From assembly GCA_048013815.1 (NCBI GenBank), contig CM106586.1:11408001-11472000 (forward strand): a stretch of 64,000 bases of DNA. Direction: 5' to 3'. The DNA comes from Setoptus koraiensis. Its lineage: Eukaryota > Animalia > Arthropoda. Positions 18,401 through 64,000 of this stretch are shown here, one piece after another. A program made the translations under genes and the position numbers. The notes beneath the pieces were generated by a model. That model was not told the origin of the DNA, ran no database searches, and worked only from the letters and a program-made list of their open reading frames with translations. Position 1 is the first letter of the stretch. Each line of letters starts with the position of its first letter.

Positions 18401-18410
18401 GATCTTTTGT

Positions 18411-39160: not shown

Positions 39161-40558
39161 CCCGAAAGGGCCCCACGTTGACACTGGCATCGGTGGTTTG
39201 GTCACGTGGGTTTCATCATACCGAGATTTTGCACTCTTTCGTTGCACGACGCGTTTCGGCCCTCCGACGATAAGATGATCGAACGATCAGCTGATCCGAT
39301 TGCGAGGATCCGATTGCGATGATCCGATTGCGACGATTCGAACTGGGCACCCGGAACGGGGACACTGACCGATGCGTCTGGCAGCAGCGTTGAATGTATG
39401 TTTTTACATTGTATGTGGCCGGTTGATTGCAATTTGCAACAACTGCAAGCATTACAAGTGTAGTTGTTGTTAGTTTGCGGCGCTAATTCTCTGCTGCTAA
39501 TGTGACGCACAGATTGCTGCGTGGGGCGCCCCCAACAGGGCGAACACAGCGCCAAAAGAGCGCGAAATGGGCGCAACAGCCCGTAGAGTTGCTGTCAGCC
39601 GATGGAGCGGGCCCCATAAATTATTGTGATCGCTTGTGTCAAACGCAAGCTACCGAATGTCAGCCAGTGTCAGGCGATAATAATAATAATAATAATGTTC
39701 GTAAAACTGTCGGCTGTTGTTGAGTGAGCAAGTCAACAGCTGAGCAAAGCTGTTGCTCGAGCCTCGAGTATGATACCGGCTCACTGGCCGCAAATCCGTG
39801 TAACCGCGTACGCCCACGCGAACAGCTTGTTTATCTAGCAACCGGTGGCGCCCCTTCCGGCTGCCAGATTACACATACATGCACAGATTATAGACGGAGC
39901 CGGTGCCGGTCAGCGCAGTTTGCGACAACTTGTGCGCCCAAACTGAGGCACGCTGTCGGATCGTTGCCCGTAATGGGGCGCAGCAATCATCACTATTCAG
40001 CCTGAATATTATTCAGGCTGTGATTGGGCCACGCGAAACGGCACGGGCCAACCTGAAGAAATCATCTCATCAGCCGGGCCCCATTACAAAAGCTTCATTA
40101 GGCAGTTGTGATTTAAAGCACAAACCGGGCCCGACGCGAACACACAATGGCCGCGGCCCACTCACAGCCACTGACCATTTTTGCTGGCGGGCCCCTCGGT
40201 GTTTGTTGCCGGCCCCCACTGGTCGACAAAAGCAGGTTCTTTGTCGTTGTTGGGCGCCTGGCAGCATTTGAGAGTTGCAACTGTCGCGGCGCTGTCGTCG
40301 GCAAACAATCACGCCGGCCCGCAACAGTGACATCCCGCAACGAGCGCGCACACCGCCGAAAACGGAACGCTGAAAACGGAACGCTGAAAACACAACGCGG
40401 GCCCTAATGGGTGATTTATGCGCCCTCATTAATTATCATTATACAATTGGAGGCACGAGATAACTGAGTGCGTTGCGCATTTTGTGCGCGTCGGGCGCGC
40501 TGTCGGGCAGCACGATGACGCGCGTGCGGTTTGCCCATCGCGCGGGCCCCATTTCGTT

Positions 40559-40616
40559 GGCCGGCAATTTTCATCGGGCCGGCAATTTTCATCGGGCCGG
40601 CGATTTTCATCGGGCC
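40559..40616. repeat. 18-bp tandem repeat GGCCGGCAATTTTCATCG, 3 copies
   Basis: Directly visible. Confidence 0.9.
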
Positions 40617-41299
40617 GCAATCGGGCTCTTTGTTTGGTTTGTTTCTTTTGTGCTGGTCGATATTTTGTCGCAAAACACAATGTGCAAAATGCAGCATGTT
40701 GGCGCATATTGCGTCTCGGCTCGTTGTGCGTGGGCGTGCGCCCCCATCGCTGACACACAACCGCGTATGTTGACGTAATGACTGCGTGTATTGACGCTGG
40801 CAAACGCTGGCGGGCCATTAGGGCCGACTGGACATTTTTCATCGGCCCCATCGGCGCCGCCATTGTTTGCGCTATATTTAACAACAACTAAAAAACAAAA
40901 CATTGTGTGCATCGCTTGTCATTTATACATTGACACATCGAGCACACAGCGCGCCGCACACGTACGCTGTAAATCAATCTCGGGCCCCATTGATGCATCA
41001 GCACCGCGCACCGGATTCTTTGCACGGTGCACGGTGCACAGTCACCGCGGGCCGCCAAAATGACGGGCCGGCCGGCAGTGACGTAATTCCATTTAGAGGC
41101 TTCGAAACGCGCACCGCCAACCACCGGTTGCTGGCCGCAATCAGCTGTCGGGCAATCGGGGTACTCGTGTCCTAACGCCGTCCAGCTCTGGCCAGTATGT
41201 GCCACTGATGCAAGGTGCATGCAATCTCGCCATTACAACAATGGCTGCACCCTTGTGCAGGCCCCTTGCGACACAAGCTCGTTAGCGGCGCTGGCGCCC

Positions 41300-41367
41300 G
41301 TTACGTCACTTGCAAAGTTACGTCACTTGCACAGTTACGTCATTTGCACAGTTACGTCACTTGCACA
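41300..41367. repeat. 17-bp tandem repeat GTTACGTCACTTGCACA, 4 copies, each with a TTACGTCA bZIP-type site
   Basis: Directly visible: units at 41300, 41317, 41334 and 41351. Confidence 0.92.
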
Positions 41368-47300: not shown

Positions 47301-47824
47301 TAACATACATATAGTTGTTGTTGTGGTTGTTGTATAATTTAATTGACTATTTATCATTTTGATTTAAAGCTCTTTAGGCCTGTATAGTTTGGTGTGCGCT
47401 CGGCAATTGGGCCGGCCACACACTCGTCTACCTGTTTGCTCTAATTTAGCAATTAATGAATCAGAGCAAACAGCATTTCGGAATATACATTTCATGTGAA
47501 CATTACATATGAACATTTGTGTGAGATATACGTAATCATATAGATATATATATTACTTGTTGCAAACATTTGTTGTATTATCATTAATACTTGTCTAGTG
47601 GTTGTGTCCATTGTTGTGGATACAATTTTGATTTTAAGTTTCCCTTTGTGTCCGTGCAATACGCTGACTATTTAACTATTTAGTTACTGCAACGACACTG
47701 CAATTGCCACTATCAGTTGACCAGTCAACTATGTTGTGATCGATTACGATCGAGCTGGCTCACTCAATAGCATTGCAATAATTTGTTTTTAGATCGTATT
47801 TAGTTTGTTTCTTAGTTTGGGCGC

Positions 47825-49328
47825 TCACATACAGGTGGCCTGAGAGTTTGTGTTTTGGCTCAAATACAATAGTTGCATAATGAGATTTACCGAATTTGAT
47901 ATCTCGGCCTTGTGATCGTTCATCATGTGCGAATTGAGCCATTTAATTGATTTAAAGCGCCTATCACAAATGGGACAAGCCTCCGTATAATGACTATAGT
48001 ACCTATTATTACTACTACCTGTAGTTGTGGTTGTTGTGTTGGTGGTTGTGTTGCTGTTGTTTGCGGTTGTGATAGCGGCCGCTGTTGCAATTGTCGATGG
48101 TGTTGTTGTTGGCGGCGTGTGCGCCGTGTTGCCGCTAGCCGAGCTGGAATTAGAGCTACTTCCGTTGTTGTTTGCCAGCACATTATCGACAACGTTGAGC
48201 GACAAACAACCGTTACTCGTTGTCTTTTGGCAAGTGGCGCCACTCGTGTTGGGCTGCTGCTGTTGTTGTTGTTGTTGTTGTTCGTTGTGACTATTGCTGG
48301 TGTCGATGGACAACGGCATCTGTTGATACTGATGCAATTGCTGCTGCTGGCAATGAAGTTGCTGCTGTTGTTGTTGTTGCTGTTGGTCTAATCCCGCCAG
48401 ACTCTCGACAGACGATACCGTGTTGGGCGTGTTGGGTAGCTGCTGGTGCGCCGCTTGGTTGCTGTTTCCGGTCAGCATACCCACGTCGCTCAGCAATGAG
48501 TTAGCTAACCGGGTATTTAGAGCGGCAAAGGGTGAGGCGGCCGGATTGAGGCGCGTGGATGTCACTTTTTGGTTGGCGACAGCGGCCGCAATGGACTGCA
48601 TTAGAATGTGGTGATGCTTTTGTTGTTGACTAGTCAAATTGGCAGCAGTGTTGTTGTTGTTGTTACTATTCGTATTCATGCTGCTACCCGTGGTGTTGTT
48701 GCTGACCGACACGTTGGACATTGCCGGCGACACGCACGACGCCGGACGACCCGACGACGACGAGGGTGTGTAGCCGCCGTGATTGTCGCCCGTGGAGGGA
48801 GGCCGAGTTTCGAGCGGTGAGTTGCGTTGTTGTTGCTGTTGTTGTTGTTGTTGTTGTTGTTGTTGCTGTTGTTGCTGTTGTTGGTGGTGGTGATGAAGTT
48901 GTTGTTGTTGTTGCTGTTGGAGTTGCTGATATCTCGCGTGGGCGGTCAACTGAGCGGTGGCCGCGGACAGGGCCGCCGCCGAATGAGCGGCAGCCGCCGC
49001 TGCTGCCGCCGCCGCCGCGGCGGAACCCGCGCCCACGCCCGACGAGTAATCTGTTATGCCGTGCGTGTTTGATTTGTGCACCTTGAGAAAGTATTTTGAG
49101 CACAATTCTTTTTGGCAAATATCACAAACAACGCCACCACTGTTCGAGGCCTCTTTTGGGTGTTCGTCTAGGTTGATGCCATGCATTTTGAGCATGTGGG
49201 TCTTCATAAAATACTTGTTGCACAATTCCTTATTGCATATATTACAATAATTAGTCCTATTATTGTTGATGACGTTCGCCGGAGCGGGCGCCTGACCCAT
49301 CGCCTGTTGTTGTTGTTTTTGATGCTGT

Positions 49329-49360
<32 letters not shown>

Positions 49361-51208
49361 CTGTTGTTGTTGTTGTTGTTGCTGTTGCGAAGCATAAAAT
49401 TGTTTCTGCATCTGATACATGGGATGGTCAAGCAGGCCGCTCAGACTCACGACACCGGCGCCACTTCCGGTTGAGAGGGCATTGTGGGGGTCAGTCAACG
49501 ACGACAACGCTGTTAACTGTTGGCTAGTTGAGGGTGCGCCCGTTAGGGCTATAGCGCCGGCGTTGTTATTATTGTTGCCGGCGGCGGCGGCGGCGATGGT
49601 GCTGTTGACGGGACTGGCGCTACTGGTGGGCGTGTTGAGCGCGGACGACGCCGTTGAGGTGGGTACAATCCTTTCGTTGTTGTTGTTGTTGTTGTTGTTG
49701 TTGCTATAATTGTTATTACTACTACTACTCTGGTTGTTGCTGGCGTTGTAATTAGTTGGTTCGTTTACTAATGAGGTAAGCTTGTTGTTGCCATTACTGG
49801 CAGCAGCTGACTGGCTGTTGATTGGCGTTGGTTGTTGTTGACTGTTGTTGTTGGTTGTGTTGTTGTTGTTGGTGTTGTTGGTGGTGATGTTGTTGTTGCT
49901 GCTACTGTTTGGTGTGGTGGGCGGCGACGAGGGGGGCCGCTGCAAATAGATGCTACCCGAGGTGGGCGTGGTGGCGGTGGTGTTATTGGCGCCGGCGAGC
50001 GGTTGATTGACGGGTAATGTGGGCGAGGGCGCCGACGACGACGAGTGGCTACTTCCGCTGTTGGTGTGTTGCGACACTTGAATGCCGTGCTTGTTTGCCT
50101 TGTGTGTCCTGAGAAAGTATTTATTACATAACTGTCTATTGCACAGCTCGCAGTAGGCTTCGAGATTGAACACGCCATTGTATTCGCCAGATGGGGCCAC
50201 CTGATGCGACGCACCATTTTGGGCCGACTGATTGGGGCCCGCGTTGCTGTTGCTGCCATTGCCAGTGCCAGTGCCATTGTTGTTGTTGTTGTTGCCGTTG
50301 GCCCCGTTGAGCAGCTCGCTCAAGGGCAACAGAGCCGCGCTGGGGCACCCGTTGGAATTTGCAACAATCTGTTGGTGTTGGCTGTGCGCCGAGTTGGGGC
50401 CGGCCGTTGGCGGATAATTGGCGAGGCCCGCCGCGGCAGCGGCTGACAGTTGCTGCTGCTGTTGCTGCAAGTGCCTGTGGTGTTGACTAGTGAATAGGAC
50501 GGCGGCTTGCGCCACCGCCAAGCTATTCAGGGGATGATATGCGGCTGGCGTCGCCGAGATGGCGCTGCCGAGCTGCGGCTGCTGCTGCTGGCTTAATTGT
50601 TGTCTAATTGTTGCCGCCAGCCCGGCGCCCCCCAGGCCCCTTTCGAGGGCACTCTGGGCGACGAAATTGGCCGCCAGGAGGGTGGCGTGTTGCTGTTGTT
50701 GTTGTTGTTGTTGATCGTGCAACGAGGCCGTTTGCTGCTGTCGGGCCATTTGTTCGCCGGCCGCGGCTGCCGCAACCGCGGCCGCAATGGCCGCCTTAAA
50801 CTGCAGCTCAAAGTCGGTGCGGGACAGCGCCGCGCCGCTCTGCGGGTTGGTCAGCGGGGGCGACTTGAGGCCCGACTGGTCGTCGGGATGCTGATGATAT
50901 TGCTGCTGCTGTTGTTGCTGTTGTTGTTGTTGCTGCTGTTGTTGTTGCTGTTGTCTAATCATGTATAGGTGCTGGTTGAGGTGGTCGAAATCGAGCGCGT
51001 GACTCGGGTGCTGGGGTACGCGCATATCGTCGGCCGCCAGGGGAGAATTGCTGTTTGAATTGGTGGCGCCACTGAAGGAATTTTCGCAATCGCTCACTTC
51101 GTCGTCGCCGTCGCCGTTGTCGTTGTCGTAATAATTGTCTAGACGGGCCATTTTGGGCGAGTTGCTGTCCACTCGCAACGGATTGGCTTGTTTGCGCTTG
51201 TTTGACAT
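47825..51208 (-). CDS. Large C2H2 zinc-finger transcription factor (1127 aa) with four dispersed fingers and polyQ/N/A tracts
   Basis: Fingers CELCNRQLCNKYFLRTHKANKH, CNICNKELCNKYFMKTHMLKMH, CDICQKELCSKYFLKVHKSNTH and CPICDRRFKSIKWLNSHMMNDH; N-terminal basic KRKQANP. The ORF end overlaps a GTATGT donor-like site, so further 3' exons are possible. Confidence 0.9.
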
Positions 51209-53533
51209 GTCTATATAATTGTTTATAATTATGATAATGTGACTACAATTACAATAATATAACTATAATTTATAACTTTTAATTGTTGTGTACTTCTTGC
51301 TTGCAAATTGATAAAGATAATAAAAAGAGAGGGAAAAATTTTGATTTTCGTTTCGACGGCCGGACGCTCTCGAATGGGTTGTGGCCAGAGCGAGAGAGCT
51401 TGCCCGGACCGAGTTGCTTATAAGTATAAATGTGCGATCATATATCTATGATGTGAAAACTATGTATGTATAATAACGCGCAAATCTGCATATCTGTAGA
51501 AAAATTTTGATTTTAAGCTCATAGCTTCACGATGGGGTGCCGTCTACATAATACGATAATAATCACCATCAATAATTACAACACATGTAGTAATTATCAA
51601 CGTTATTATGCAATAGCTTCAATAGGAGGCTACATATAGCGTGCGTACAGTGCGTATATGTCGCCTACTACGATGGCGATGTTTGAAATGTTGTTGTTGT
51701 CGTCGCGGTTGTCGCCGGAATCAAATCAAACCGAGTGTTCGATTGCCTTGATCCGACTTGTTGTTTTGATTTTGATTTGTTGTTTTGATTTTGATTTGTT
51801 GCTCGTGTATTTTGATTGGTTGTGATGGTTACATGGGTTGCTTGTTTTGCTTGCTGTCGCGCTGACAGTTATCACTAGTTACGGTTACCATTCATAAGTT
51901 GGCCTTTTATACGTATATATTTATATGTATCGGATATATATATATCACTGCGTGTGTTGTTGCTGTTGTTGCTGTTGGGTGAATATGATGATGATAATTT
52001 ATAATGCGACTCGATGTGCTCATTTGATTGGTATCTCGTTTCATTGGCATGAGCGCGCGTGCGTGTGTGTATTATAATTAATAATGATGATAATTTTTTT
52101 CAATTTATATTTGTATTATCTCTACAATAATTGAACGTCGCACACCAAGCCAAGATGACGATCATCTCCTTGTCTGCGACTGTGTGTGTGTGTGTGTGTG
52201 TCTTTTGAGAGCTTGCTGGTAAAAAATTTGATTAATTTGATTAGTGACAATGCTAATAATAATGTAAAATGTCGATGATGATACAAATAATGGCGCCGAT
52301 AGTGCTGACTAATCGCAACTCTCTCTCTCTCTGTCTGTGTGCGAGTGGCTGTTGTCGGTGTCGCTGTCGGTGTCGCTGTTGTGGCTGTTGTCGCTGTTGA
52401 ATTGACAGACAAAATGTAGATTGAAATGTGGAGAATGGATAATGGAGAATTGACAGCGAGCTAGCGAAGGCAGCAAATTTGAGATGGAAATGGAAAGAGA
52501 AATAAAACAATCGTTTTGTTTATCCTCTGCTCGGCGTCAGCTGCTGCCGCTGTGGTGTCGCTGTCGATGCTTCTAATCGAATCTATTAATATTTAATGCA
52601 GACGACAAAAAATGTGTAAACTCCGACGATTTTCTCTCAATGGCTCCTCTACTGGCTACAATGGAAGCTCTACAACAGGCTCTATGGCAACCGCATTAGA
52701 GCTTGCTGACAGTGACGTTGTGCATCCTCATTATTGCCAATACTAATTTACCTCTTTCTTTCATCATCATCATCATCGCCATCATCATCAGCGTATCATC
52801 ATCAGTGTGTAGTCGTCGTCATGAGCGTTGGAGTTTCATTATTTCATTATTGAATTCATTCTGTCTCGTTCTATTTCAATGGTGGTGGTGGTCGTCGTCG
52901 CTCTTTTCATTCATTATAATTAGTAATCAAGCAGCGTTGCTAATAAACAACAATGTCGCAAATTGTATATATACACTATTGGCGTGCCAATACTGCCGTG
53001 TGTGTGTGTGTGTGTACCAATAGTGTGTTTTTCATGTGTCGTTTTTTATCTATCCGTGTCTCGTATTTTGTGTGAGTGTGTGTGTGTGTGTGTATTTCTA
53101 GGTTACGACGTCGACAACAACAACAACGACACCACCACGACGCTCCACATACAAACGGCTCGTTACAGGTAGCTGACGTTGGTTTCAAAGTGAAAGTGAA
53201 AGTGAAACAGTGCTGACACACTAACTAGTTAATTATGGGCGCGCATGTTGCCCTCTATCCAAATGTTTGTTGTGTTGTAAATCGATTGATTATTGAGCTC
53301 TAATTTAACTATTATTAGCTATTTGCCATTTTTCGCTTCACGCTCATTTTTCCCTCTGTCTGTCTAGCTATTGTTGTCATGCACACACACACACACACCG
53401 ACGCCCGCTGATTATATATGCAAATAAATTAATTAATAACTTGTGTCGTGCTCGTTTCGGCAGCACTCTTTTTGCCTCCTTTATAACGGCGCGTGACACT
53501 GACTGATTGATGAGCACCCTTGTGGTGTCTCAA

Positions 53534-53608
53534 TGTTCTGGTGTTCTGGTGTTCTGGTGTTCTGGTGTTCTGGTGTTTTAGTGTTCTGGTGTTCTGGCGG
53601 TCTGGTGT
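53534..53608. repeat. 8-bp tandem repeat TGTTCTGG, about 9 copies
   Basis: Directly visible. Confidence 0.9.
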
Positions 53609-55788
53609 TTTCGGTGTCTCGGTGTTTGGGTTTTCTTGTTTGTGGGTTTTCTTGCTTGTGTTATTTGTCGGTGTTGGGGTTTTGGCGTGTGTTTTGCTAT
53701 TTCGGCGTTTCGCAAATTCGCTCTCGGGCTCTCGGGCTCTTGGGCGCTCGGGCTGTCGGGTTATTGTCGTGTGTCTGGGTTTTGTTGCACGTCGGCGTCT
53801 GGCTGGTTTTTGTACGTGTCGGGCAGCCGCGTGCAAAGGTCGCAGATGCTTGATTAACGCGCGCGCCTCATTGGCAAACTTGACTGGTGGGTGTCGCGCA
53901 CAACAAATCGCATCTACAAACAAACCAAATATCTAAATATCGGCGGGGGCCGCACAAACTCGCAAATGGCCAAGACGACAGCCACGACTAACAGTGAGCT
54001 GAGTTGCGTTTGGGGGCCACAGCGACGCGCCGACAACAACAACAACAGCAGCAGCAGCCACCCAAACAACTGGTTCCAATAGTAGACACACGCCAAGAGG
54101 GGGAAAGCAGCTGCCCAGCAAAAAAGTGCTGCTGCTTGCGCAATGTTCAACGCGTGCTATACGCGTGCTATACTCGTGCTATATGCGCTCTATGCGCTGG
54201 CAAGAAATGACGCACACGCAATGGTAATGGCTCATTTTCTAATTTTTTCATTCAAATTATTCCCTCCTTTGGCCAACTTGGTCGCGCTGCTTTCCCCCCT
54301 CCCACCGCACGAGCCACTCGCAAAGAGCTCTCACAAGAGTCGCCGTCGACATTATGTAACGCCCTTGCCTTACTTGGGACTGGCCGCACTGTGCCACGAG
54401 CACAAGTATTGAGAGACACACGCACAAACACGCACATTAAATCAACATTGTTGTTGTTGTTGTTGCTGTTGCTGTTGTTGCTGATGTTGCTGTTGCAAAC
54501 TAAAACGACGGGGGAAAGCAGCCAACGTGTGCGCCTCAATTTTGTGTACCTAGCTGTGCGCTGTGCCGCCAGCCCTGGTCAGCACTGGTCAGTGTGTGTG
54601 TGTGTGCGCGATAGAACACGCGCAAAGCGGAGTGGAATGATATAAAATGGGGGAAGCAAGTAAAATGAAATTTTTCAGTGAAGTAAAAAGGAGAAGCACT
54701 ACCACTGCCCATTCAACTTGCACAACAACTTACACACAACAACTGGCGCACACACACACACACGCACACACACACAAACACACGCACACGTACACACACA
54801 CACACACACTCACACGCACACTGTGCTGACCAGTGGTCAGCACAGTTCCTTCCCCCAAGCCCGTTGTTAGCAGTGAGAGAGGGAGAGCGAGAGTTTTAGT
54901 TTCGAAGATTAAAATGAATAGGACACACGAACGGGCCCCGCAGGGGGAAGGCAGCGGGCGCGCAACGGGGGAAAGCATTTGGGGGCCCATTGGAGAGGGA
55001 GGCAGGGAGCCCAGTAAACAAGTCGCGCGCGCCAGCGACTCGGAGGCGAGAATTGAAAAAGTGAAACTTTTCAGTACTTTAAGCTGCTGCCGCTGCCGAT
55101 GTTGGCGTTGTTGTTGGCGCTGTTGTTGGCGTTGTTGTTGGCGTTGTTGTTGACGCTGTTGTTGGCGCTGTTGTGCAACGGCCACGAGTCGTGCACGTCG
55201 CCGCTGTCAGTGGCGCATAGCGACCAGCCAATAGCGCGCAAAAGATCGCTATGCGCAGTAGTGTTTTGTTGTTGTTTATTGTTGTTGTTGTTGTTGTTGT
55301 TGTCGCTGTTGTTGTCGTTGTTGTTGCTGCTGCTGTTGTTGTTGCCCGTTTTTCTTTTCTTTGCACTCCCTCCCCCCCTCGCTCCCGACGCACACACACA
55401 CACACGCACACACACACTTTGCTGTCATTGCACGCGCACGCTTGACCACTCATATGCAACTCGATATGACGCAACGACGGCCAGTTAGTTTAATAGTGCC
55501 GGTATATCGCTCTTGTTGTTTGCGCCATTGTGGAGCATGCGCACAAGTGGCTGGCGCAAGCAAGAGTTCAGTCACTCTTTCTTTTTATCGGCCTGCGCCC
55601 CTCGGCCCCCTTTGCCCGTTAGAGTCGGACAACAGCCGCCAGCGGCAACAATGACCACGACAACACCCTCACCTCGCTGGCCGTAGTCCGAGCGCGCTCA
55701 AGGCGCCCTCTCGCCCCATCGGTTGGCGTTTGTTGCAACTTGCAAGTGCTAATTTGAATCGTTCGGCCCCCGGGCCTTGCGCCACCAC

Positions 55789-55920
55789 CGGGCACCGGGT
55801 CTCCGTCGGGCATCGGGCCTCCGTCGGGCATCAAGTCTCCGTCGGGCTTTGGGTCTCCGTCGGGCTTCGGGTGTAGGTCGGGTATCGGGTCTCCACAGGG
55901 CATCGGGTCCGCGTCGGGTA
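55789..55920. repeat. 18-bp degenerate tandem repeat CGGGCATCGGGTCTCCGT, about 7 copies
   Basis: Directly visible. Confidence 0.88.
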
Positions 55921-56303
55921 GTGGGAGGCCCCGTGTGCAACGCGGCGGGTATCTGAAGACCCGCCGCGGGTTGGATTGGTCAGCGCGGTTGCTGCGCGAC
56001 AGACACGCCCGACTCTTGAAGAATTTTTAATATTGGCGCCTCTCGCCATGGCCGCGCCAAAGCCAGCGCTGGCAACAAAGCCATTTATTAATGATGCAGC
56101 TTCGCGCCGGCCTAAAAGACTTGAGCTTGTCAAGTTGCTTTTTGCAAACTTTAGGGGCCCCCGTTTGGCCACATGGCCCTGTTTTTATGGAGGGGTCGCG
56201 CGTTTTGAGGCTCCAGCAGGGCTCATAAACTGGCCAGAGTCCCTGCGTCCCCCCCCCTAAATAGACGACGGCTAAATAGACGTGGGCTAACTAGACGCTA
56301 GGC

Positions 56304-56395
56304 GCCCCAACTGGCCATTTTTGGCAGCGCCAACTGGCCGGTTTCGGCAGTGCCAAACGGTCCGTTTCGGCAGCGCCGAACTGGCCAGTTGGGGC
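56304..56395. repeat. ~23-bp tandem array bounded by perfect 14-bp inverted repeats
   Basis: GCCCCAACTGGCCA (56304-56317) and TGGCCAGTTGGGGC (56382-56395) enclose CCAACTGGCC...GGCAG(C/T)G units. Confidence 0.8.
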
Positions 56396-58490
56396 ATCGC
56401 GTCGCATCGTCGCAGCCTGAATCCGCGGCTCGCCTAATGACATCATAACTTAGAATTTAATGGAATTTTGTTCTTTTGTCATCGCTGGCTTCTTCTTTTT
56501 GTTGTGTGTGTGTGTGTTTGTACGCGTTCGCGCTGGCCCCTGTCAGTGGCGCTGGCGCCCACTCATTTATCCGTGCGCCTGGCGGCGGCCAGCGCCAACG
56601 GCAGCGCACACCGAGTGGGGCCCACAGCAGCAGCAGCAGCAGCAGTGGCAGCAATTTTGGGATTGGCGCTGGTCAGCAGTGAGTGGTGCAAGTTCAATTT
56701 GGCGGCTGGCGATTTAGCGCTCTCTCAATGATGTCGAGCGCGACTTATTATAAATGTGCCAAGCACCGTCGGCCAGGTCCGGTTTATGGGGGCCCGGCTG
56801 TGTGGCGGCGAGCGAGGCTCACTTTTCAGTTTTGGGGCTTCCATTCTGGGCAGTCGTTTTTGGGCGCACGCTTTTTTCGCGGCGCAATCTTGCATCTCGT
56901 TAGCGCGCGCCGCATTGAGCCAACAAATTCAGCCAGCGAATTTCGCCAGTCCCGTTATGCGCCCAGCCGAAGTGGGCCAACGCGAGCGGCTCGAACAAGC
57001 GGCTCGATTGGGGCCCGTCGGTGCACAGCGCCAGCAGCAGTTAAATGGCGTGGATTGCACACAAGCACCCGCACACACACACACACACACACTCACACAC
57101 TCGCACACACACACACTCACACACACACACTCACACACACAAAGGCTGCACCATTATAAAGAAAATTAAAATTGGCCTATGGTCAAGCCGCCAGGAGGCG
57201 CCCGGCGCGCGCGGGCCCCAGCCTGGCGCGCGATTAGTTATTGCGGCGCGAAGCACCATAAAACGGGATAAGGCACACGTAGACTGTGCGCCGTAGAGCG
57301 GCGGCCAGAGCTAACGGAAACAGTGCGTTCAATGTTCAGTTTTCATTTCATCAAATCTCTTTTTCGAAGCTGCTCCGGCGCTTGTGTGCGTGTGCGTTTG
57401 TAGCTGGCACACGCACACGCACACACGTCGGCCCAAAGTAATTCAAATCGAGAGCGAGAGCCAACACGGCCAAACGGGCACTTGGAGGGGCTCTTGGGGC
57501 CCGTTTGCTAATGACCATCAAGTGAGGTGCTGGCGCTTGCAAAAAACGGGACGAAACAGCAAAAAGATTAGAGCTGGCGAGTTGTTTTCGGGGCGCCGAG
57601 AACGGGGGCCAGAGCGAAGGCGACGGCGAAAACGAAAGCGAAAACAAGCAACAAAAACGACAACAACGGCCAATATAAACTTGAGAGGAGCCCGGCGAGC
57701 AATCTTGATTATAATTTGAGAGAATGTTGTTGTCGTTGTTGTTGTTGCTGTCGTTGTTGTTGTTGCTGTTGTCGTTGTTGTTGTTGTTGCTGTCGTTGTT
57801 GTTGTTGCTGCTGCGCCCGCTCGCACTCCGCTGCTGGCATTCTCAATTTGGCCGAAATGATGGCCTGGCCCCCGTGCACTTATGCTCGAGCGAGCGGCCA
57901 GTTTGTGTAAAAAGAACAGGCAAACAGTTCGCGCTCCACCGACGGCGCCCACCGACGCCAGCTCCTCCACTGCCGACACTGTCTAACAATGTGCAAACTC
58001 GCCAGGGACGCCGCCCGTTGCAACTTGCGCCCGCTCGGACAGCCGCGCTGCCGCACTAACTGCGCTGTCCGACGATACTTATTGCGTCATAATGGTTGCA
58101 CACCATTGTATACTATTGTATACTGTTGTATACTGTTGTATTACGTAATACTGTGGCTCTGTTGTGCTGCCGTGCTTGCCGCTGTGATTGCGGCGCCAAA
58201 GGGTCGCCACGGTGCTGTGTGGCGCGCGCAAGCGGCGGGCCGCCGAAAACAAGCCGCGTGGGCGCCTCAGAGTTTAGAGTAGTAGTCCGTTTGATGGTGC
58301 GGCTCTGACCGGTGCGCGTGTTTGCCCGTCGCGGTGACCGCCGCAAACGCCGGCGCAATCGGCGAGCGAATTTAAAACGCTTTAAAACGCTCGCCGTTCG
58401 GCCGGCGGTCTTGCGAACGCGCAAATCGGACGAGTGCGGCCGAAAGTCCGCGCGCTGAACCGCTGGCCATACGGCGCGCAAGGACGCGCT

Positions 58491-58582
58491 GCGATACCGC
58501 GGATATCGCTGGTCGCGGGTATCGCTCGTTGTCGCGGATATTGCTCGTTGTCGCGGGTATCGCTCGTTGTCGCGGGTATCGC
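58491..58582. repeat. 19-bp tandem repeat CGCGGGTATCGCTCGTTGT, about 4 copies, preceded by an inverted partial unit
   Basis: Directly visible; GCGATACCGCG at 58491 resembles the reverse complement of the unit core. Confidence 0.85.
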
Positions 58583-59751
58583 CGAGCGGCGACCGAGGAG
58601 CGGCGACGCCGAGAACACGGCAGGCATCGAGCCGACAGCAAGACGAGGCGCAACTTGGAATTGGCCGCCAACAATGGCCAACTCGAACATTAAACGGCGG
58701 CTCGTCGGGAGCATCATCATGTAACAAATAAATCAACGACTGCCGACTAATTAGCACAACATACGCAACGCAGCGTGCATAGTGGCTCATATTATGTTGT
58801 TGCGGTTGTGGTTGTCGCGGTTGTTGTTGTGGTTGTCGCGGTTGTTGTCGGCGCTGTTGCGGTTGTTGCGGTTGTGTTACTGGCGCTAGATTAGGCAGCG
58901 GTATCAGCAATAATCTACGATAATGGCGCCGCCGGAGGACGCAACAATAAGCTCAAATGTTCAAATGTTCAACAGAGCGACGGCACGAACAACAACAAGT
59001 TGAAAATGAAAGATTTTTATTATGATGTTGTAAATGCAACTGCAATTGTGCAATTGTTGGCCCATTGTAGTTAATGCAAGCAGTCACTTTACAAGTGCCA
59101 TTTTTTACTTTACTTTATTTTAGTTTTGTTGTTTGTTTTTATTTTCCATTTCGTGGTTTGGACTTGGTGCGACTTCATTTTAATAGTTTGCCATAGTATC
59201 AAATGTCACACTAAGATGTCAGATAATGGTGCCCGGTTGTCGTGGCAACCACGTTATTATTATAAATAGTAAAGTAAAAAGTAAAAATAAAATTCTAAAT
59301 AAAGAGACACAGCGAGAACAAATAAAATGGACTAGTCTATTGAAAAGTTATCAAGTGCGTTTATTTGCATTGTGACACACACACTGTGTGATGAACTTTA
59401 GTAATTAGCACTCATTGCCGCTGCTTATGTCATGTCAGACATGGCAATATAAACGATTGTTGTTAATTTGCTTGATAATTTGTTTGTCGCTTGTTGTTTT
59501 TTGTCGCGGCTGGCCGACTATTACAATTAGATGCCGATAAAGTGGCTGCGAAATGGCGAAATGGCGAAATGCTCGAATGGCAAAATGGCGAAATGGCGAA
59601 ACGATAAAGAGCCTAGAAGGAACTGAGCCTGCACCAGCCTCGTTGGACCTCATGATATGATGATGATTTTAATTTTATCTAATCTCACTACCTCTATCGC
59701 TTATCGCTTATTGGTATTAATAATTAATTAATTTGTTAATTACAGCGCCTA

Positions 59752-59788
<37 letters not shown>

Positions 59789-62466
59789 AGCCAGTCGCAA
59801 GTATTGTGGAAGTTACAACAAAAGTTGCCAGTTGTAGCTGGAACTCAAGAGAGCGACAGAAGGTTATGACAACAATGCAGACATTGCAAACAGGCTAGAT
59901 ATTTATATGAGAGATCGTCGTCTATTCGCGCTGTTTAAACGGCGATATACGACGCGATCTATACGCTTTGTATCATGTTTGTGTGGTGGACTAGATAGCA
60001 GCAGCAGCAGAGAGAGCCAGTGTAAGTGTAATTGTTGTTTCAATTGGAAACTTTGTTATTATCCAATAATTTACACAAACAATATATATATCGTCAACAT
60101 TTATAGATATTTAGCACACGCACACACACACTAGTCTACACTATTCTGTTCGCCATTGTTGTTATTATCTAATACATGCCAGTTTCATAGACTAACTAAG
60201 CAAAGTATCAAAAGTTGTCAAGTTTCAGCTAGATTGGTCGCCGTCGCCTTAGTCGTCGCCATAGTGGTGCTGATGGTGGTGGTGCTGCTTGTCATTGTCG
60301 CTGGCAATCATTAGTGTAAAGAGTCATTAGTGGTAAGTCATTTAGTCATTTAGCAGTTTTACATCATGAGTGGAGCTCGTGCAAAATAATAAAATAAAAA
60401 CGAGACAACAGATTCATCAATGTTGTTGATCGCTAAGAGATGAACCACCGTTTGGTTCCCATCATGACTAAGACTAGACTGTTTGTTGTTCTATATCTAT
60501 TCATCTCAGCATATCTCAATCAGTATTGTTGTGTGTGTCTCGTCTTGTTGAGCAACTTAGGTGGTGATGATATTACTATTATTAATTGAATTTCAATTCA
60601 AAATGTATAAGTTAGATAATAATTGACACTATCTAACTACCAACTTATCTGTTGTTGTTGCTTTCTATTACGTAATAGTTATGAATTTTCAACATCCATC
60701 AAATGGCAATGCTATTGCATACAGTTTATAGTATCATAGTGCTAGTATAAGTATAAGCAGTAGTTGTAGCATTAGTAGTAGTAGTAGTATTATTATTTGG
60801 TAGTAGTAATAAGAAAACAACAAATTTGAGAGCTGAGATTCTACTTTCATCACACATCTTCTTCTTCTTTCTCTTACTTTGTCTCTGATGTGATCATGTG
60901 AACACAAGCAGATACACACACACACAAAATAGTAAAAATAGCAATGGCACTCATCTATCGCCTATCTATAAATATTATTATTATTATTATTTATATGATT
61001 TAATTTCAATACTCTAATAACACCATTGAATAGTGTCTATCCAATGCGTGTGTGTATAAACGTTTCAAGTGTTTCAAGTGTCTTGGAAGGCACATTTGAA
61101 ATATACGGCGAGTTGAGATAGTTTAATTTCAAGTATATCCTAGTGTTTGTTTGGTGCCATTGGTCACATTTTATGTGCGCTGTTGTATAATTAAACAAAC
61201 ACAACACCATGATGTAACATGACTTAACAACAACACAGCTAATGGCCTTTATTTTCACTTGGCGCTTATAACTCTCATCTCTTGAATCTCTTCATTTTGT
61301 GTCAAATCCAGCCAGTTAATTGGCCAGATCAGGCCTAACTAACTTCCTCTCTGACAGATCTCGTTATTCGTGCAAGCGCTGCCGTTGCTGCCAATGTGTC
61401 GGGCATGTTTACATCGTGATCTAGCCAGTGTGGCCAGTGTGGCTACAATTGTGCAAGTGTGTAATTATGACGAGTGTCCAACTGAGCGATGACTAATTGA
61501 TCGGATTTGATATTCTGGCGACACGCCGAACGGTTGGCGGTGCCGGTTGCGTTTTATGCAAAACTCCTGCCGACAATGACTGTCGATTGGGCGAAGGGAG
61601 CAACAGAAGTGAGCGAGCGGGGGAGAGAGAGATGATCTCACAATCACAATTCTCACAAGTCTGTCAATCAAATTCACCGGTCCAGCCGAAGATTCTCGAG
61701 TCGAGGTCGAGAATCTCGACTGGCTCGAATCGTCTGACCGCGACCGTCGGCGCCGATTCAAAGCCGCCCGCACTGAGCCAATTGGGCCAATTGCCAATTG
61801 GCCGACAACGAGAGCCTGAGAAGCCGCTGCGGGCAAAATAAATGAGATAAATAAATGAGATAAATCCGCAACAATGACAAGTGCAAAACTGATGAACGTT
61901 GTAATTTAGATCAATTGCAAACAATCAAACGGCAAGCTAGGTGACACTCCGGCAACGCCAGCGGCCCCTCTTGGGCGTGTCGCAAACTAACGTTCACGAT
62001 AAAAGTATTGTGCACTCACGATGCACCCAACTGCGTTCCTGGGAGATAACAGGAAACAGCGAGGGAGAGCGCTCCCGCGACATGGGAGACCACATGTGTG
62101 TGTGTGTGTGTGTGTGCGTGAAGACGATCGCGGCCTTTGTTGTTGTTGTTGTGCTGCAGTATGATTATTGTCCAGCAACAACAATCATACTGCTGGCTGG
62201 TCTTGCGGCTGAAATACGCACTTTTATATATTATCAACAAATTGCATCTAGCCGCAGAAAAAAAAAACCAGGAATGTCGAGATTATGACTCACACCAACA
62301 AATTGTCACCACCAACTAGTAGCCTTATTATCACGCTAGACTCACCAGAAACAGAAATTGCCATTTATTCAGTGTTACTATTACATTCTCATCTTCATTA
62401 CAGCTACAAATAGACGACAAACAGCCGTTGCATCTAAGAGAAAATTATCCTCCAGCTCCCACTGTC

Positions 62467-63876
62467 ATGGCTATTTCATCACAGAAGCGTCTGTCCTACG
62501 AAAGGAAACTGGTTGCTCTGAGGAAAGGCCCCATCAACGATCATCAATTGACTATTTGGTGCGAAAAAGCCGTCAAGAGTGTGGTGAGAATATTGGGCAA
62601 CAAGGTTAGCCAATTGAAACTTTTGGAGAGTTGCATCAATCTAAAGGATCCCCAAACGGACTGTGTACTCGTTCCAAAGCTGTTCAATTGTAGATTGAGA
62701 ATATCGCATAGACGCGGCATGGCCAATGTGGTCTATTGTCGCCTGTGGCGCTGGCCCGACATACAGTCGCACCATCAAATTGAGTCCAGTTCCACCTGCA
62801 AGAACCCGTTTGATCCTAGAACGTCCACTAGTATTTGTATAAACCCTTATCACTATGAGCGCATTCAAAAGACACAACATGTTACATTCAAGTCTCTAAT
62901 ACCGCCCGATATTTCAACATCTAACGAGGATTATGACCAATCGTCGGCGTCGCCACAACAGCAACAGTGCCAACTGTTCAAGATGGCCACTTGTGCCTCT
63001 CAACTACAAGCAAAAAGATCCAGCTCCTCAGATAAAACAAGCCCACTGCCATCTGTTTCGGGCCTTGGTAATCAACATCAACATGCCAACACTGCCAACA
63101 CTCCAAGCACTCCTGCAAAACATCAGCTGGGCATAGCAAGCCTATATGACACAAACGAGGATCCTTACGCAATACCTAATCAAAATAGTCAAAATTGTCT
63201 ATCTCATTGTGCTGAGATGGAGGAAGAAGAAGAGTCGGGATGTCAACTTTTCATTGATGTACTAAGCCAGCCTGTGTATTGTGGCGGCAAGCCATTCTAT
63301 TTTGTCGATAGTAAATATTGGTGCTATATACTATATTATGAATATTCCCATAGGGTAGGCGAAAAATTTCAAACTAGATCACCCTCACTCGTTATAGATG
63401 GACACACCGGCTCGCCAAGCTCAAAAAGATTCTGTTTGGGATCGTTCGCAAATCCAAGCCGCAAAGAAGGCGTTAGCAAGGTAATAGGTCTCATAGGCAA
63501 AGGAGTCAGGTTGAATTATGTCAACGGTGATGTTTACGCCGAATGTTTGGGTGGCTCAAGTGTGTTTGTGCAAAGTTGCAATTGTAACAGACGTTACAGA
63601 TGGCATTCAGCTACTGTCATCAAGATTGAAACTGGAAATCATTTGAAAATTTTCAACACTAGAGATTTCGCACAATTAATGGCCAAAAGCATTGCTCATG
63701 GTTATGACGCAGTTCAATGGTTGTCCAAAATGTGTACAATAAGACTCAGTTTTGTTAAAGGCTGGGGTCAAGAGTACAAGAGAACCACCATATTCTCAAC
63801 ACCTTGCTGGATTGAGATTCAATTGAATGGGCCGCTCGAATGGCTAAATAAAGTACTAAGTCAAATGAGGTGCTAG
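62467..63876 (+). CDS. Divergent Smad-family protein (MH1 + MH2, R-Smad-derived), intronless, with no C-terminal SSXS
   Basis: MH1: WCEKAVKSVV...C...RLRISHRRG...VYCRLWRWPDI...C...CINPYHYERI. MH2: WCYILYYE...RVGEKF...RFCLG...IGKGVRL...VFVQSCNCN...LKIFN...MCTIRLSFVKGWGQEYKRTTIFSTPCWIEIQLNGPLEWLNKVLSQM, then RC-stop. First in-frame ATG at 62467, downstream of an acceptor TTACAG at 62403. Confidence 0.93.
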   Translation: MAISSQKRLSYERKLVALRKGPINDHQLTIWCEKAVKSVVRILGNKVSQLKLLESCINLKDPQTDCVLVPKLFNCRLRISHRRGMANVVYCRLWRWPDIQSHHQIESSSTCKNPFDPRTSTSICINPYHYERIQKTQHVTFKSLIPPDISTSNEDYDQSSASPQQQQCQLFKMATCASQLQAKRSSSSDKTSPLPSVSGLGNQHQHANTANTPSTPAKHQLGIASLYDTNEDPYAIPNQNSQNCLSHCAEMEEEEESGCQLFIDVLSQPVYCGGKPFYFVDSKYWCYILYYEYSHRVGEKFQTRSPSLVIDGHTGSPSSKRFCLGSFANPSRKEGVSKVIGLIGKGVRLNYVNGDVYAECLGGSSVFVQSCNCNRRYRWHSATVIKIETGNHLKIFNTRDFAQLMAKSIAHGYDAVQWLSKMCTIRLSFVKGWGQEYKRTTIFSTPCWIEIQLNGPLEWLNKVLSQMRC

Positions 63877-64000
63877 CTGTGATTGGAGGAGATTTTTTCC
63901 CTCTTCTCTACCGCAGCGGATGTCATGGCGCAAGTCGCAAGAGATATCTGCATAGTTTTAATCTGTTGCTGATATCGATTTATTTATTATAATCGCATTT

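What the first reader, a model, noticed from the sequence alone, without database searches (positions are those of the whole stretch)
62467..63876. Tail-less R-Smad: no SSXS motif, a rewired DNA-recognition hairpin and no basic NLS helix
Seen: MH2 is R-Smad-like to the end (NGPLEWLNKVLSQM, unlike Smad4/Medea) but stops at RC*, with no SSXS. The MH1 hairpin reads RLRISHRR instead of RLQVSHRK; KKLKK is replaced by RILGNK; there is no PPxY in the linker; and the gene is intronless. The MH1 zinc ligands and the basic MH2 pocket (IKI, VKGWG, YKR) are kept, and the L3 loop K..T is closer to the Smad2/3 R..T type. Established: SSXS phosphorylation activates R-Smads, tail-less mutants act dominant-negatively, the hairpin Arg/Gln/Lys read the GTCT element, and L3 sets receptor specificity. 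Inference: a fast-evolving duplicate, possibly a retrocopy, acting as a receptor-independent, co-Smad-like or decoy Smad with new DNA specificity, which would be an undescribed TGF-beta pathway branch.
Basis: partly seen in the sequence, partly recalled or inferred. Interest (0 to 1): 0.72.

Follow-up and report, generated by a model that had tools for sequence, protein, structure and literature searches.

The report
Tail-less Smad2/3 of a gall mite
A tiny plant-feeding (eriophyoid) mite keeps, under purifying selection, a Smad2/3-type signalling protein that has lost the C-terminal serines through which TGF-beta/activin receptors normally switch such proteins on. Most of its other oddities are shared by all eriophyoid mites and are not signs of a stray gene copy.

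Summary
Window 62467-63876 (+) is an intact 469-codon ORF with an MH1 and an MH2 domain. It is closest to Smad2/3, ends ...LSQMRC* without SSXS, has the hairpin RLRISHRR, RILGNK in place of KKLKK, and no PPxY. Two other assemblies show the same stop codon.

The genome is an eriophyoid mite, a group in which over 80% of genes lack introns, so being intronless says nothing about retrocopying.

I found an undescribed eriophyoid-specific Smad2/3 clade of at least 10 proteins, one from Aceria tosichella. It shares most of the "odd" traits: a 4-residue insertion, the linker motif IPPDxSxSxED, L3 YKR, hairpin Gln replaced, no PPxY. Those proteins still end in ...PPxGCGSTS. The window protein is sister to that clade, as its species is in a neighbour-gene tree. 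Unique to it are the missing tail, which fits two in-frame 12-nt deletions, and 19 substitutions at otherwise fixed sites, including the trimer salt-bridge Asp to Asn.

A variant in another run differs at 9 listed positions, all synonymous.

Best reading: a functional, non-phosphorylatable Smad2/3 descendant, probably an acceptor-only, co-Smad-like factor. Not settled: expression, whether it is an orthologue or an in-lineage duplicate, and the mechanism. The scan flagged this stretch twice (overlapping windows).

The parts
62467..63876 (+). Complete coding sequence of the tail-less Smad: 469 codons plus a TAG stop, in a single exon
   Evidence: ORF list and translation. Pfam MH1 and MH2. Stop codon confirmed in runs X2 and X7. 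9 of 9 listed variants are synonymous.
62545..62556 (+). Four-residue insertion (QLTI) before Trp31. It is shared with the eriophyoid Smad2/3 clade and absent from canonical Smad2/3.
   Evidence: Alignment A2; coordinates checked.
62560..62865 (+). MH1 DNA-binding domain (aa 32-133), with zinc ligands C66, C111, C124 and H129 intact
   Evidence: Pfam 4.4e-25. Invariant columns in A1. AF2 pLDDT above 90, and TM 0.88 to Smad3 MH1 bound to DNA.
62587..62604 (+). Helix-2 segment RILGNK in place of the basic KKLKK motif
   Evidence: The motif is also degenerate in the eriophyoid clade.
62692..62715 (+). DNA-reading beta-hairpin RLRISHRR. By Smad3 numbering, Arg74 is kept, Gln76 is Arg and Lys81 is Arg.
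   Evidence: The eriophyoid clade reads RLL[VI][SA]HR[RK].
62866..63312 (+). Linker (aa 134-282), predicted disordered. It has no PPxY and four Ser/Thr-Pro sites.
   Evidence: AF2 pLDDT below 50 for aa 138-263; motif search.
62899..62937 (+). Linker motif IPPDISTSNEDYD, a shared derived mark of the eriophyoid Smad2/3 clade (IPPDLSTSFEDS)
63313..63867 (+). MH2 domain up to the end of helix 5
   Evidence: Pfam 9.4e-56. About 55% identity and E about 6e-73 to Smad2/3 MH2. Foldseek TM 0.94 to 1dev.
63757..63807 (+). L3 loop region KGWGQEYKRTTIFSTPC. Pocket residues K431, Y437 and R439 are kept; the subtype positions are K438 and T441.
   Evidence: The Smad3 equivalents K378, Y384 and R386 are assigned from my own knowledge. 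Y384 is shown to be a Smad4-interface residue in PMC3176292.
63847..63849 (+). Asn461 codon, at the position of the trimer salt-bridge Asp (Smad3 D408, Smad2 D450, Smad4 D537). It is Asp in nearly all aligned canonical Smad2/3 (at least 95%) and eriophyoid-clade (at least 90%) proteins.
   Evidence: D461N. The function of D408 is taken from PMC3176292.
63868..63876 (+). End of the gene: Arg468, Cys469, TAG. The clade's ...PPxG-C-GSTS is reduced to C, which fits two in-frame 12-nt deletions with the ancestral TAG kept.
   Evidence: DNA comparison of 3' ends; alignment A2; reads.
63870..63916 (+). Candidate 47-nt intron with a weak donor (GAG|GTGCTA) and a good acceptor (tctaccgcag|C). It is unverified. 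If used, it would replace RC* with a 25-residue tail that still lacks a terminal SxS.
   Evidence: Read from the sequence. A verified-looking intron in the window has donor GTAAGT and is 98 nt long. No RNA reads were available.

Best explanation
The ORF is a real, selectively maintained gene of an eriophyoid (gall/rust) mite.

What it is. It belongs to an eriophyoid-specific, strongly derived offshoot of the Smad2/3 (Smox, activin-branch R-Smad) lineage. That clade had already replaced the hairpin Gln, lost the PPxY, changed the L3 Arg to Lys and changed the tail from CSSMS to CGSTS. The window's species is the earliest-branching eriophyoid sampled. In it the gene, most simply the orthologue of that clade, has also lost the residues PPxG and GSTS by what look like two in-frame deletions. 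The protein therefore stops two residues after helix 5. It has no C-terminal Ser-x-Ser for a type I receptor to phosphorylate.

How it probably works (inferred). The MH1 fold, the zinc site and two of the three base-contacting residues are kept. So are the L3 loop and the phosphoserine-binding pocket (K386, K431, Y437, R439). The protein itself can offer no phospho-tail, and its trimer salt-bridge Asp is Asn. I therefore infer that it binds DNA and docks onto phosphorylated partners, meaning the pSxS tail of other R-Smads or an activated receptor, as an acceptor-only, co-Smad-like modulator and not as a receptor-activated R-Smad. The hairpin change from Gln to Arg probably shifts its DNA preference.

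Shown: identity, clade membership, tail loss, purifying selection. Inferred: orthology, the deletion history, and the whole mechanism.
For: - Domains and fold.
- Tail-less end and other motifs.
- Stop codon identical in a depth-115 contig (X2) and in X7.
- Selection: 9 of 9 listed differences in X11 are synonymous, P = 6e-7. If the 5 unlisted end-of-contig differences were all nonsynonymous, P = 5e-4.
- Taxon: the neighbouring CAP gene's best named hit is Aceria tosichella, and about 40 unnamed Logan or JGI relatives form one clade with it.
- Eriophyoid Smad clade with shared rare changes (4-aa insertion, IPPDxSxSxED, SHHQI, NPYHYER, YKR, QMR), all ending in GCGSTS or close variants (GCCSTS, GCGTTSK).
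- Careful ML tree: window protein plus clade 100/98, with the window protein sister to all 10. The CAP tree places the window species sister to all 40 other eriophyoid sequences, support 98.
- 3' DNA comparison fits in-frame deletions with the same TAG stop.
- No closer relative in an exhaustive search of 1.84 billion cluster representatives (standing for about 15 billion proteins) or in JGI metagenomes.
- Interface: D461N is one of 19 window-specific changes at otherwise fixed sites. D408 forms the Smad3-Smad4 salt bridge, and D408H abolishes Smad4 binding (PMC3176292).
- Interface residues Y238, R243, R268 and Y384 are kept (A1 invariant columns).
Against: - There is no RNA evidence. The one raw RNA run laid gave 0 reads, which is no test, and X11 is only guessed to be RNA.
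- A tail-bearing copy elsewhere in this genome cannot be excluded. An in-lineage duplicate would take the same place in the tree.
- Upstream synteny is not kept. In three other eriophyoid contigs the Smad is flanked by a 352-aa and a 102-aa ORF and followed by a MAST kinase.
- The join of two long branches could be an artefact, although the shared indel and linker motif argue otherwise.
- D461N might weaken any trimer formation, which would undercut the acceptor-only model.
- A weak 47-nt intron could change the last residues.
Confidence: 0.55

Rival explanations
1. It is a lineage-specific duplicate. A tail-bearing eriophyoid-type Smad2/3 still exists elsewhere in this genome and does the receptor-driven signalling. 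This tail-less copy has become a decoy or dominant-negative modulator.
For: - The flanking genes conserved around the Smad in three other eriophyoid contigs are absent from the 62 kb upstream.
- The linker is much shorter than in the clade: the protein is 469 aa against 561-953 aa.
- The branch is about 1.7 times longer than the CAP tree would predict.
- Another note reports further diverged R-Smads on the other piece of the genome.
Against: - No second Smox-type gene has been noted in a genome that the first stage appears to have read almost completely. This is weak evidence.
- No window-type copy turned up in any other eriophyoid sample.
- The tree position equals the species position.
- Being intronless is uninformative here.
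- No poly(A) tract is visible in the 124 nt after the stop.
Confidence: 0.25
2. The annotated end is wrong. A 47-nt intron (63870-63916) is spliced out, giving ...LSQM-SGCHGASRKRYLHSFNLLLISIYLL*, or a further exon beyond the window supplies the tail.
For: - There is an AG|GT at the right place, with a good polypyrimidine tract and CAG acceptor 47 nt downstream.
- The downstream frame reads G-C-x-G-x-S, which faintly recalls GCGSTS.
Against: - The donor GTGCTA is poor compared with the GTAAGT of a clear 98-nt intron in the same window.
- 47 nt is very short.
- The spliced product still has no C-terminal SxS.
- Every relative encodes its tail in the same exon directly after QMR.
- The simple alignment QMR[PPxG]C[GSTS]* explains the end without splicing.
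Confidence: 0.1
3. It is a decaying pseudogene, or the premature stop is an assembly artefact.
For: It has lost a motif thought essential for R-Smads. It carries many substitutions at conserved sites. No expression data exist.
Against: - The ORF is 469 codons long and uninterrupted in 41% GC DNA.
- 9 of 9 listed variants are synonymous.
- Both domains are predicted with pLDDT above 90.
- The zinc ligands and pocket residues are kept.
- The stop is identical in independent assemblies, one of them at depth 115.
Confidence: 0.04

Closest known systems
Smad2/Smad3 (Drosophila Smox): activin/TGF-beta-branch R-Smads
   Same: - MH1-linker-MH2 architecture.
- MH2 about 55% identical, E about 6e-73, TM 0.94.
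- Zinc ligands, the L3 loop with Thr at the second subtype position, and the phosphoserine pocket are kept.
- It falls inside the Smad2/3 clade, 100/100 against a Smad1/5 outgroup.
   Different: - No C-terminal SSxS.
- Hairpin Gln76 is Arg and Lys81 is Arg.
- KKLKK is lost and there is no PPxY.
- L3 Arg is Lys.
- The salt-bridge Asp (D408) is Asn.
- Overall identity is only about 40%, in a family where 117 of the 120 best word-search hits keep a canonical SSxS end and nearly all keep RLQVSHRK.
Eriophyoid-mite Smad2/3-type clade (P0250-P0252, P0261, P0391, P0393-P0397; P0396 is the Aceria tosichella UniRef entry 'Mothers against decapentaplegic homolog')
   Same: - Shared derived 4-residue insertion, ER.LLAL N-terminus, SHHQI, NPYHYER, linker motif IPPDxSxSxED, L3 YKR and QMR.
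- The hairpin Gln is replaced, there is no PPxY in the full-length members, and the gene is a single exon.
- Sister relationship with 100/98 support.
   Different: - The clade ends in PPxGCGSTS or close variants (P0396 GCCSTS; P0252 GCGTTSK), with the terminal Ser-Thr-Ser kept in all but P0252. The window protein ends RC*.
- The clade has Leu at the hairpin Gln position, not Arg.
- Clade linkers are much longer and Q-rich (proteins of 561-953 aa).
- The clade has a remodelled beta-strand region where the window protein is still canonical (CNCNRRYRWH).
- The clade keeps Asp at the D408 position.
Smad4/Medea (co-Smad)
   Same: It has no SSxS, yet keeps an MH1 and a phosphoserine-binding pocket. 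This is the functional analogy I propose: an acceptor-only subunit.
   Different: - It is not a relative in that sense. MH2 identity to Smad4 chains is about 33-40%, against about 55% to Smad2/3.
- Smad4 sequences form a separate, well-supported group.
- The Smad4 hairpin RLQVAGRK and the long Smad4 insert in MH2 are absent (A1).
Tail-less or non-phosphorylatable R-Smads made in the laboratory (Smad2/3 lacking SSxS, or 3SA mutants), and the Smad8B splice variant.
   Same: An R-Smad body without the receptor target serines. Such proteins act as dominant-negative inhibitors when over-expressed.
   Different: Those are mutants or minor isoforms beside an intact gene product. Here the tail-less form is the only product the gene can encode, and it is kept by selection.
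Inhibitory Smads (Smad6/7, Dad)
   Same: They have no SSxS, and their MH2 can dock on receptors.
   Different: I-Smads have a degenerate N-terminus without a DNA-binding MH1. Here MH1 is well conserved (Pfam 4e-25, pLDDT above 90). The Smad7 MH2 match is far weaker: 30% identity, TM 0.75, rank 44.

Membership tests
Smad family (MH1 + MH2 proteins) | An MH1 domain with the Cys3-His zinc site and a beta-hairpin | tested here: met
   Pfam PF03165 at 4.4e-25. C66, C111, C124 and H129 are invariant columns. TM 0.88 to Smad3 MH1.
Smad family (MH1 + MH2 proteins) | An MH2 domain | tested here: met
   Pfam PF03166 at 9.4e-56. PDB Smad2 MH2, E about 6e-73. TM 0.94.
Receptor-regulated Smad (R-Smad) | A C-terminal SSxS (Ser-x-Ser at the very end) that the type I receptor phosphorylates | tested here: not met
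   The protein ends ...SQMRC*. The stop is confirmed in other assemblies. No frame downstream within the window gives a terminal SxS.
Receptor-regulated Smad (R-Smad) | An L3 loop and a basic phosphoserine pocket (Smad3 K333, K378, Y384, R386) | tested here: met
   K386, K431, Y437 and R439 are present. The assignment of pocket residues is from my own knowledge.
Smad2/3 (AR-Smad) lineage | Phylogenetic placement with Smad2/3 and not with Smad1/5, Smad4 or I-Smads | tested here: met
   Careful ML tree: the Smad2/3 group including the window protein has 100/100 support against a Smad1/5 outgroup. Smad4 is separate in the quick tree. Caveat: the branch is long.
Smad2/3 (AR-Smad) lineage | L3 subtype residues Arg..Thr (Smad2 R427 and T430) | tested here: inconclusive
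   The window protein reads Lys..Thr (K438, T441). The Thr matches Smad2/3, and the Lys is neither the Smad2/3 Arg nor the Smad1 His.
Smad2/3 (AR-Smad) lineage | A linker PPxY motif for Smurf/Nedd4L WW domains | tested here: not met
   There is no PP.Y anywhere in the protein. It is also absent from the full-length eriophyoid-clade members.
Eriophyoid-type Smad2/3 clade (newly delineated here) | Shared rare changes: a 4-residue insertion before the first Trp, the linker motif IPPDxSxSxED, L3 YKR and QMR | tested here: met
   Alignment A2 and the motif table. 11 shared derived sites.
Eriophyoid-type Smad2/3 clade (newly delineated here) | The C-terminal tail PPxGCGSTS | tested here: not met
   Only the Cys remains.
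Co-Smad (Smad4/Medea) | Smad4-type sequence: hairpin RLQVAGRK, the MH2 insert/SAD, and clade membership | tested here: not met
   The hairpin is RLRISHRR and there is no insert (A1). Smad4 sequences group apart. Identity to Smad4 MH2 is about 33-40%.
Processed retrocopy | An intronless copy of an intron-bearing parent, with a poly(A) remnant and target-site duplications | tested here: inconclusive
   The gene is intronless, but so are about 84% of eriophyoid genes (PMC7738191) and all clade members. There is no poly(A) tract in the 124 nt after the stop. Whether a parent gene exists cannot be tested without the rest of the genome.

The most novel reading that the evidence does not exclude
This is the mite's only activin-branch Smad. 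In this early-branching eriophyoid lineage an R-Smad has been converted into a Smad that works without C-terminal receptor phosphorylation, either as a co-Smad-like acceptor subunit or as a ligand-independent transcription factor. An animal would then have given up the canonical activation step of the Smad2/3 branch while keeping the protein. This would be part of a wider remodelling of TGF-beta signalling in these miniaturised mites.
Probability: 0.2. Interest if true: 0.75.

Novelty: new variant of a known kind. Interest (0 to 1): 0.55.

Why it matters
Phosphorylation of the C-terminal SxS is the defining activation step of R-Smads, and the motif is almost invariant across animals: 117 of the 120 best Smad2/3 hits here end in a canonical SSxS.

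A Smad2/3 descendant that has cleanly lost the motif, yet stays under purifying selection with its DNA-binding domain and phosphoserine pocket intact, is a natural experiment. It asks what an R-Smad body can do without receptor activation.

The finding also exposes an undescribed, strongly derived Smad2/3 clade across eriophyoid mites. These animals have extreme genome and body-plan reduction, so they offer a comparative series (tail CSSMS, then CGSTS, then none) for studying how a core signalling pathway is rewired.

If a normal tail-bearing copy exists elsewhere in the genome, the case shrinks to an interesting natural dominant-negative or modulator paralogue.

Tried and rejected
- Exact-sequence look-ups of the Smad and of a neighbouring gene in public assemblies found nothing on record. 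The DNA beyond the window's end therefore could not be fetched.
- One raw oligo-dT RNA run of the species label that holds this DNA gave 0 reads on the stretch. This is no test of expression.
- X11 is only guessed to be RNA, so I did not count it as evidence of expression.
- The JGI metagenome scan gave only distant Smads, 35-47% identical.
- The text and supplements of the Aculops genome paper contain nothing on Smads or TGF-beta. Literature searches found no paper on eriophyoid Smads or on natural tail-less R-Smad genes.
- tblastn of the genes that flank the Smad in other eriophyoid contigs found no match in the window, even at E = 5.
- The bacterial-type promoter/terminator scan is irrelevant to a eukaryote and I ignored it.
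- I first took the intronless state and the long branch as signs of a retrocopy. I dropped this once the taxon was known.
- I considered that the Logan protein P0269 (Smad1/5-type, L3 YKRQDV) might be the eriophyoid Mad, but I could not tie its sample to an eriophyoid.
Full report
**1. The observation**

Window 62467-63876 (+) is an uninterrupted ORF of 469 codons ending in TAG. Pfam finds an MH1 domain (aa 32-133, 4e-25) and an MH2 domain (aa 283-454, 9e-56). The best solved relatives by sequence are Smad2 and Smad3 MH2 domains, at E about 6e-73 and about 55% identity. Smad1/Mad follow, then Smad4.

An AlphaFold2 model built on a 40-sequence alignment gives pLDDT above 90 for both domains and a disordered linker at aa 138-263. 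Foldseek superposes the MH2 on Smad2 MH2 with TM 0.94 and the MH1 on DNA-bound Smad3 MH1 with TM 0.88.

I aligned the protein with canonical Smad2/3 from mites, ticks, a spider, an insect, amphioxus, a shark and Nematostella (A1). The protein ends ...NGPLEWLNKVLSQMRC where the others continue GSPxxPCSSMS. The hairpin is RLRISHRR in place of RLQVSHRK. Helix 2 reads RILGNK in place of KKLKK. There is no PPxY.

The zinc ligands (C66, C111, C124, H129) are kept, as are the pocket residues (K386, K431, Y437, R439). The L3 subtype positions read Lys..Thr. Of the 120 best word-search hits, 117 end in a canonical SSxS and nearly all keep RLQVSHRK. The departures are therefore real and unusual.

**2. 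The stop codon and selection**

I laid four public runs on 62000-64000 (2,001 letters).
- X2, from another study, has a contig at depth 115 that covers 62128-64000 without a single difference.
- X7, from a third study, has a 300-nt contig across the stop (63631-63930), also identical.
- X11, under a different organism label, holds three short contigs inside the gene with 9 listed differences. All nine are synonymous third-position changes.

Only 20% of possible single changes in the covered codons are synonymous. That gives P = 6e-7. Even if the five unlisted end-of-contig differences were all nonsynonymous, P = 5e-4. The gene is under purifying selection and is not a pseudogene or an assembly artefact.

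The one raw RNA run gave no reads at all, which is no test. Expression remains unshown.

**3. Whose genome**

The adenylyl-cyclase-associated protein (CAP) gene at 12558-13817 has one unnamed Logan relative at 95% identity and about 40 unnamed relatives at 56-67%. Its best named hit is Aceria tosichella, an eriophyid mite.

In a tree, all of these form one clade on a long stem, well apart from other mites. The window sequence plus its 95% relative is sister to the other 40, with support 98. So the genome is that of an eriophyoid mite from a lineage that branches before all other sampled ones. This rests on a single gene.

In the sequenced eriophyoid Aculops lycopersici, 84% of genes are intronless (PMC7738191). 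The window itself is full of long single-exon genes. Being intronless therefore carries no information about retroposition.

**4. Relatives**

The word search and the exhaustive HMMER search of 1.84 billion cluster representatives both put ordinary Smad2/3 on top, at about 40% identity and 332-375 bits. No close orthologue exists in those collections or in JGI metagenomes.

Among the weaker hits, a set of unnamed Logan proteins stood out. A profile search added more, including a UniRef entry from Aceria tosichella (P0396). This identifies the set as eriophyoid. All are single ORFs of 561-953 aa on short contigs.

They share with the window protein a series of rare changes that are absent from every canonical Smad2/3 (A2):
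- a four-residue insertion before the first Trp;
- an ER.LLAL N-terminus;
- SHHQI and NPYHYER;
- the linker motif IPPD[LI]S.S.ED;
- L3 YKR;
- Gln for His in E[IV]QLNGPL;
- QMR after helix 5.

They also lack PPxY, have a weakened KKLKK, and have replaced the hairpin Gln, reading RLL[VI][SA]HR[RK]. Most of what looked unique to this gene is therefore an old, clade-wide condition of eriophyoid Smad2/3.

The clade still ends in ...RQM[RK]PPxGCGSTS or a close variant (P0396 GCCSTS; P0252 GCGTTSK). A C-terminal Ser-Thr-Ser, the two phospho-acceptor positions, is kept in all but P0252.

**5. Place in the tree**

A careful ML tree (LG+C20, 412 columns) joins the window protein to the eriophyoid clade with 100/98 support, inside Smad2/3. 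It makes the window protein sister to all ten others, whose own clade has 100/100 support.

The program warns that two long branches meet. The shared insertion and the linker motif are independent of that artefact.

The topology equals that of the CAP tree. It is what orthology predicts for an early-branching species. It is also what a duplicate confined to this lineage would show if its parent copy is not in the data.

Relative to CAP, the window branch is about 1.7 times longer than expected (1.35 against about 1.35 for the others in the Smad tree; 0.41 against about 0.7 in the CAP tree).

**6. What is unique to this gene**

(a) The tail. In DNA, the relatives read CAG ATG AGA CCN CCN NNN GGN TGT GGN TCN ACN AGY TAG. 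The window reads CAA ATG AGG TGC TAG. The simplest history is two in-frame 12-nt deletions, removing PPxG and GSTS, with the ancestral stop kept. This is a clean excision and not a nonsense or frameshift mutation.

(b) Arg at the hairpin Gln position, where the clade has Leu.

(c) Nineteen substitutions at sites fixed both in at least 95% of 90 canonical Smad2/3 and in at least 90% of the eriophyoid clade.
- Sixteen lie in MH2.
- Eight of these (L405M, V409I, F413Y, E414D, Y417Q, T420S, Q458E, D461N) fall in the segments that AF2 models as helices 398-409, 413-423 and 454-466. From my knowledge of Smad structures, this is the three-helix bundle.
- Others (N331S, E337S, R340I) lie in or next to the first MH2 helices.
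- From my own knowledge, these two surfaces pack against each other in Smad trimers.

D461 corresponds to Smad3 D408. PMC3176292 states that D408 and R268 form the salt bridges to Smad4 or to another R-Smad, and that D408H abolishes Smad4 binding and signalling. The other interface residues tested in that paper (Y238, R243, R268, Y384) are kept here, and R292 is Lys.

**7. Surroundings**

In three other eriophoid species the Smad gene sits between a 326/352-aa ORF and a 102-aa ORF upstream (seen in L002 and L009) and a MAST-type kinase downstream (L001, L002, L009).

None of the upstream neighbours is detectable in the window. The 11 kb before the gene (51.2-62.4 kb) has no credible ORF and is full of microsatellites.

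Unchecked earlier notes of this scan add three leads:
- a MAST kinase 1.09 Mb further along the same piece;
- two tandem, diverged 'Mad-type' R-Smads on the other piece;
- a BMP-family ligand with a dismantled cystine knot.

Synteny therefore does not support orthology, but it cannot refute it in so distant a lineage. I could not read the rest of the genome.

**8. The 3' end**

A donor-like GAG|GTGCTA overlaps the last codons, and a good acceptor (tctaccgcag|C) lies 47 nt downstream. Splicing there would give ...QM-SGCHGASRKRYLHSFNLLLISIYLL*, again without a terminal SxS.

The donor is poor compared with the GTAAGT of a clear 98-nt intron at 6274-6371. No relative has an intron there. I give this reading about 10%.

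**9. How it most likely works**

Shown:
- a Smad2/3-derived protein with folded MH1 and MH2 domains;
- no receptor target serines;
- purifying selection.

Inferred:
- It keeps the zinc site and the hairpin Arg and Lys/Arg that contact DNA. That argues for a DNA-binding role, so it is more than a cytoplasmic decoy.
- It keeps the L3 loop and all four pocket residues that bind phosphoserines. That argues for docking on phosphorylated partners: the pSxS tails of other R-Smads or the activated receptor.
- It cannot offer a phospho-tail itself. The best fit is an acceptor-only, co-Smad-like subunit or modulator, with altered partner preference (D461N and the other interface changes) and altered DNA preference (Gln to Arg).

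Alternatives are a ligand-independent transcription factor, controlled through its four Ser/Thr-Pro linker sites or by its expression level, or a dominant-negative brake on receptors. I put about 0.85 on the identity and history and about 0.3 on the specific mechanism.

**10. Comparison and novelty**

It is a Smad and a descendant of Smad2/3. It fails the defining R-Smad test (the terminal SxS) and the clade-specific tail test. It is not a Smad4 or an I-Smad by sequence or by tree.

Laboratory tail-less R-Smads and the Smad8B isoform (from my own knowledge) behave as dominant negatives. Here the tail-less form is the gene's only product.

I found no paper on eriophyoid Smads. I rate it a new variant of a known kind. 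The accompanying delineation of a derived eriophyoid Smad2/3 clade is also new as far as I could check.

The same stretch was flagged twice by the first stage, in overlapping windows (s1-318765, s1-303191).

Noticed in passing
L001:482-11317, L002:1558-7041, L009:8141-19193: In three other eriophyoid-mite contigs the derived Smad2/3 gene keeps the same neighbours. A MAST-type kinase (DUF1908 + Pkinase) lies 2-4.3 kb downstream on the same strand. In two of the contigs a fast-evolving 326/352-aa ORF and a 102-aa ORF lie upstream. The linkers of these Smads are huge and Q-rich, giving proteins of up to 953 aa.
   Followed up: partly
window 51200-62400: About 11 kb without any credible ORF, packed with microsatellites and short tandem repeats (CA, TGT, and 8-38-nt units). 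It lies between the polyQ zinc-finger gene and the Smad gene. That is unusually long for a genome type whose median intergenic distance is about 0.5 kb.
   Followed up: partly
window 28200-47800: About 20 kb of GC-rich DNA (53-56%, against about 40% elsewhere) whose only ORFs look like low-complexity artefacts. It could be a large intron, a regulatory desert or non-coding transcripts.
   Followed up: no
window 47825-51208 (-): A 1127-aa single-exon protein that is extremely rich in polyQ, polyN and polyA. It has several copies of a C-x2-C...LCNKYF[LM]..H....HGI zinc-finger-like unit and one Pfam C2H2 finger at the C-terminus.
   Followed up: no
window 15085-15615 (-): A 176-aa ORF made almost wholly of PRDPRE-type tripeptide repeats, followed by a hydrophobic C-terminal segment. 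The opposite strand carries a mirror ORF.
   Followed up: no
window 25646-28123 (-): An 825-aa mucin-like protein with long poly-Thr runs, an N-terminal signal-like segment and a C-terminal membrane anchor-like segment.
   Followed up: no
L003:1-7331 against window 12000-20000: A Logan contig (sample SRR33593474) from a species with 95% CAP identity is collinear with the window: CAP followed by a lipase-like gene. It is the nearest available relative, but no Smad from it is on record.
   Followed up: partly
L042:232-1728 (P0269): A single-exon Smad1/5-type protein from an unnamed Logan sample. Its L3 loop reads YKRQDV (Lys in place of the Smad1 His) and its tail is SSIS. It may be the eriophyoid Mad-type Smad, but I could not establish its origin.
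   Followed up: partly
window 21887-21959 (-): A single tRNA gene (Rfam 71 bits) sits between the NIP7-like gene and the LTV1-like gene.
   Followed up: no
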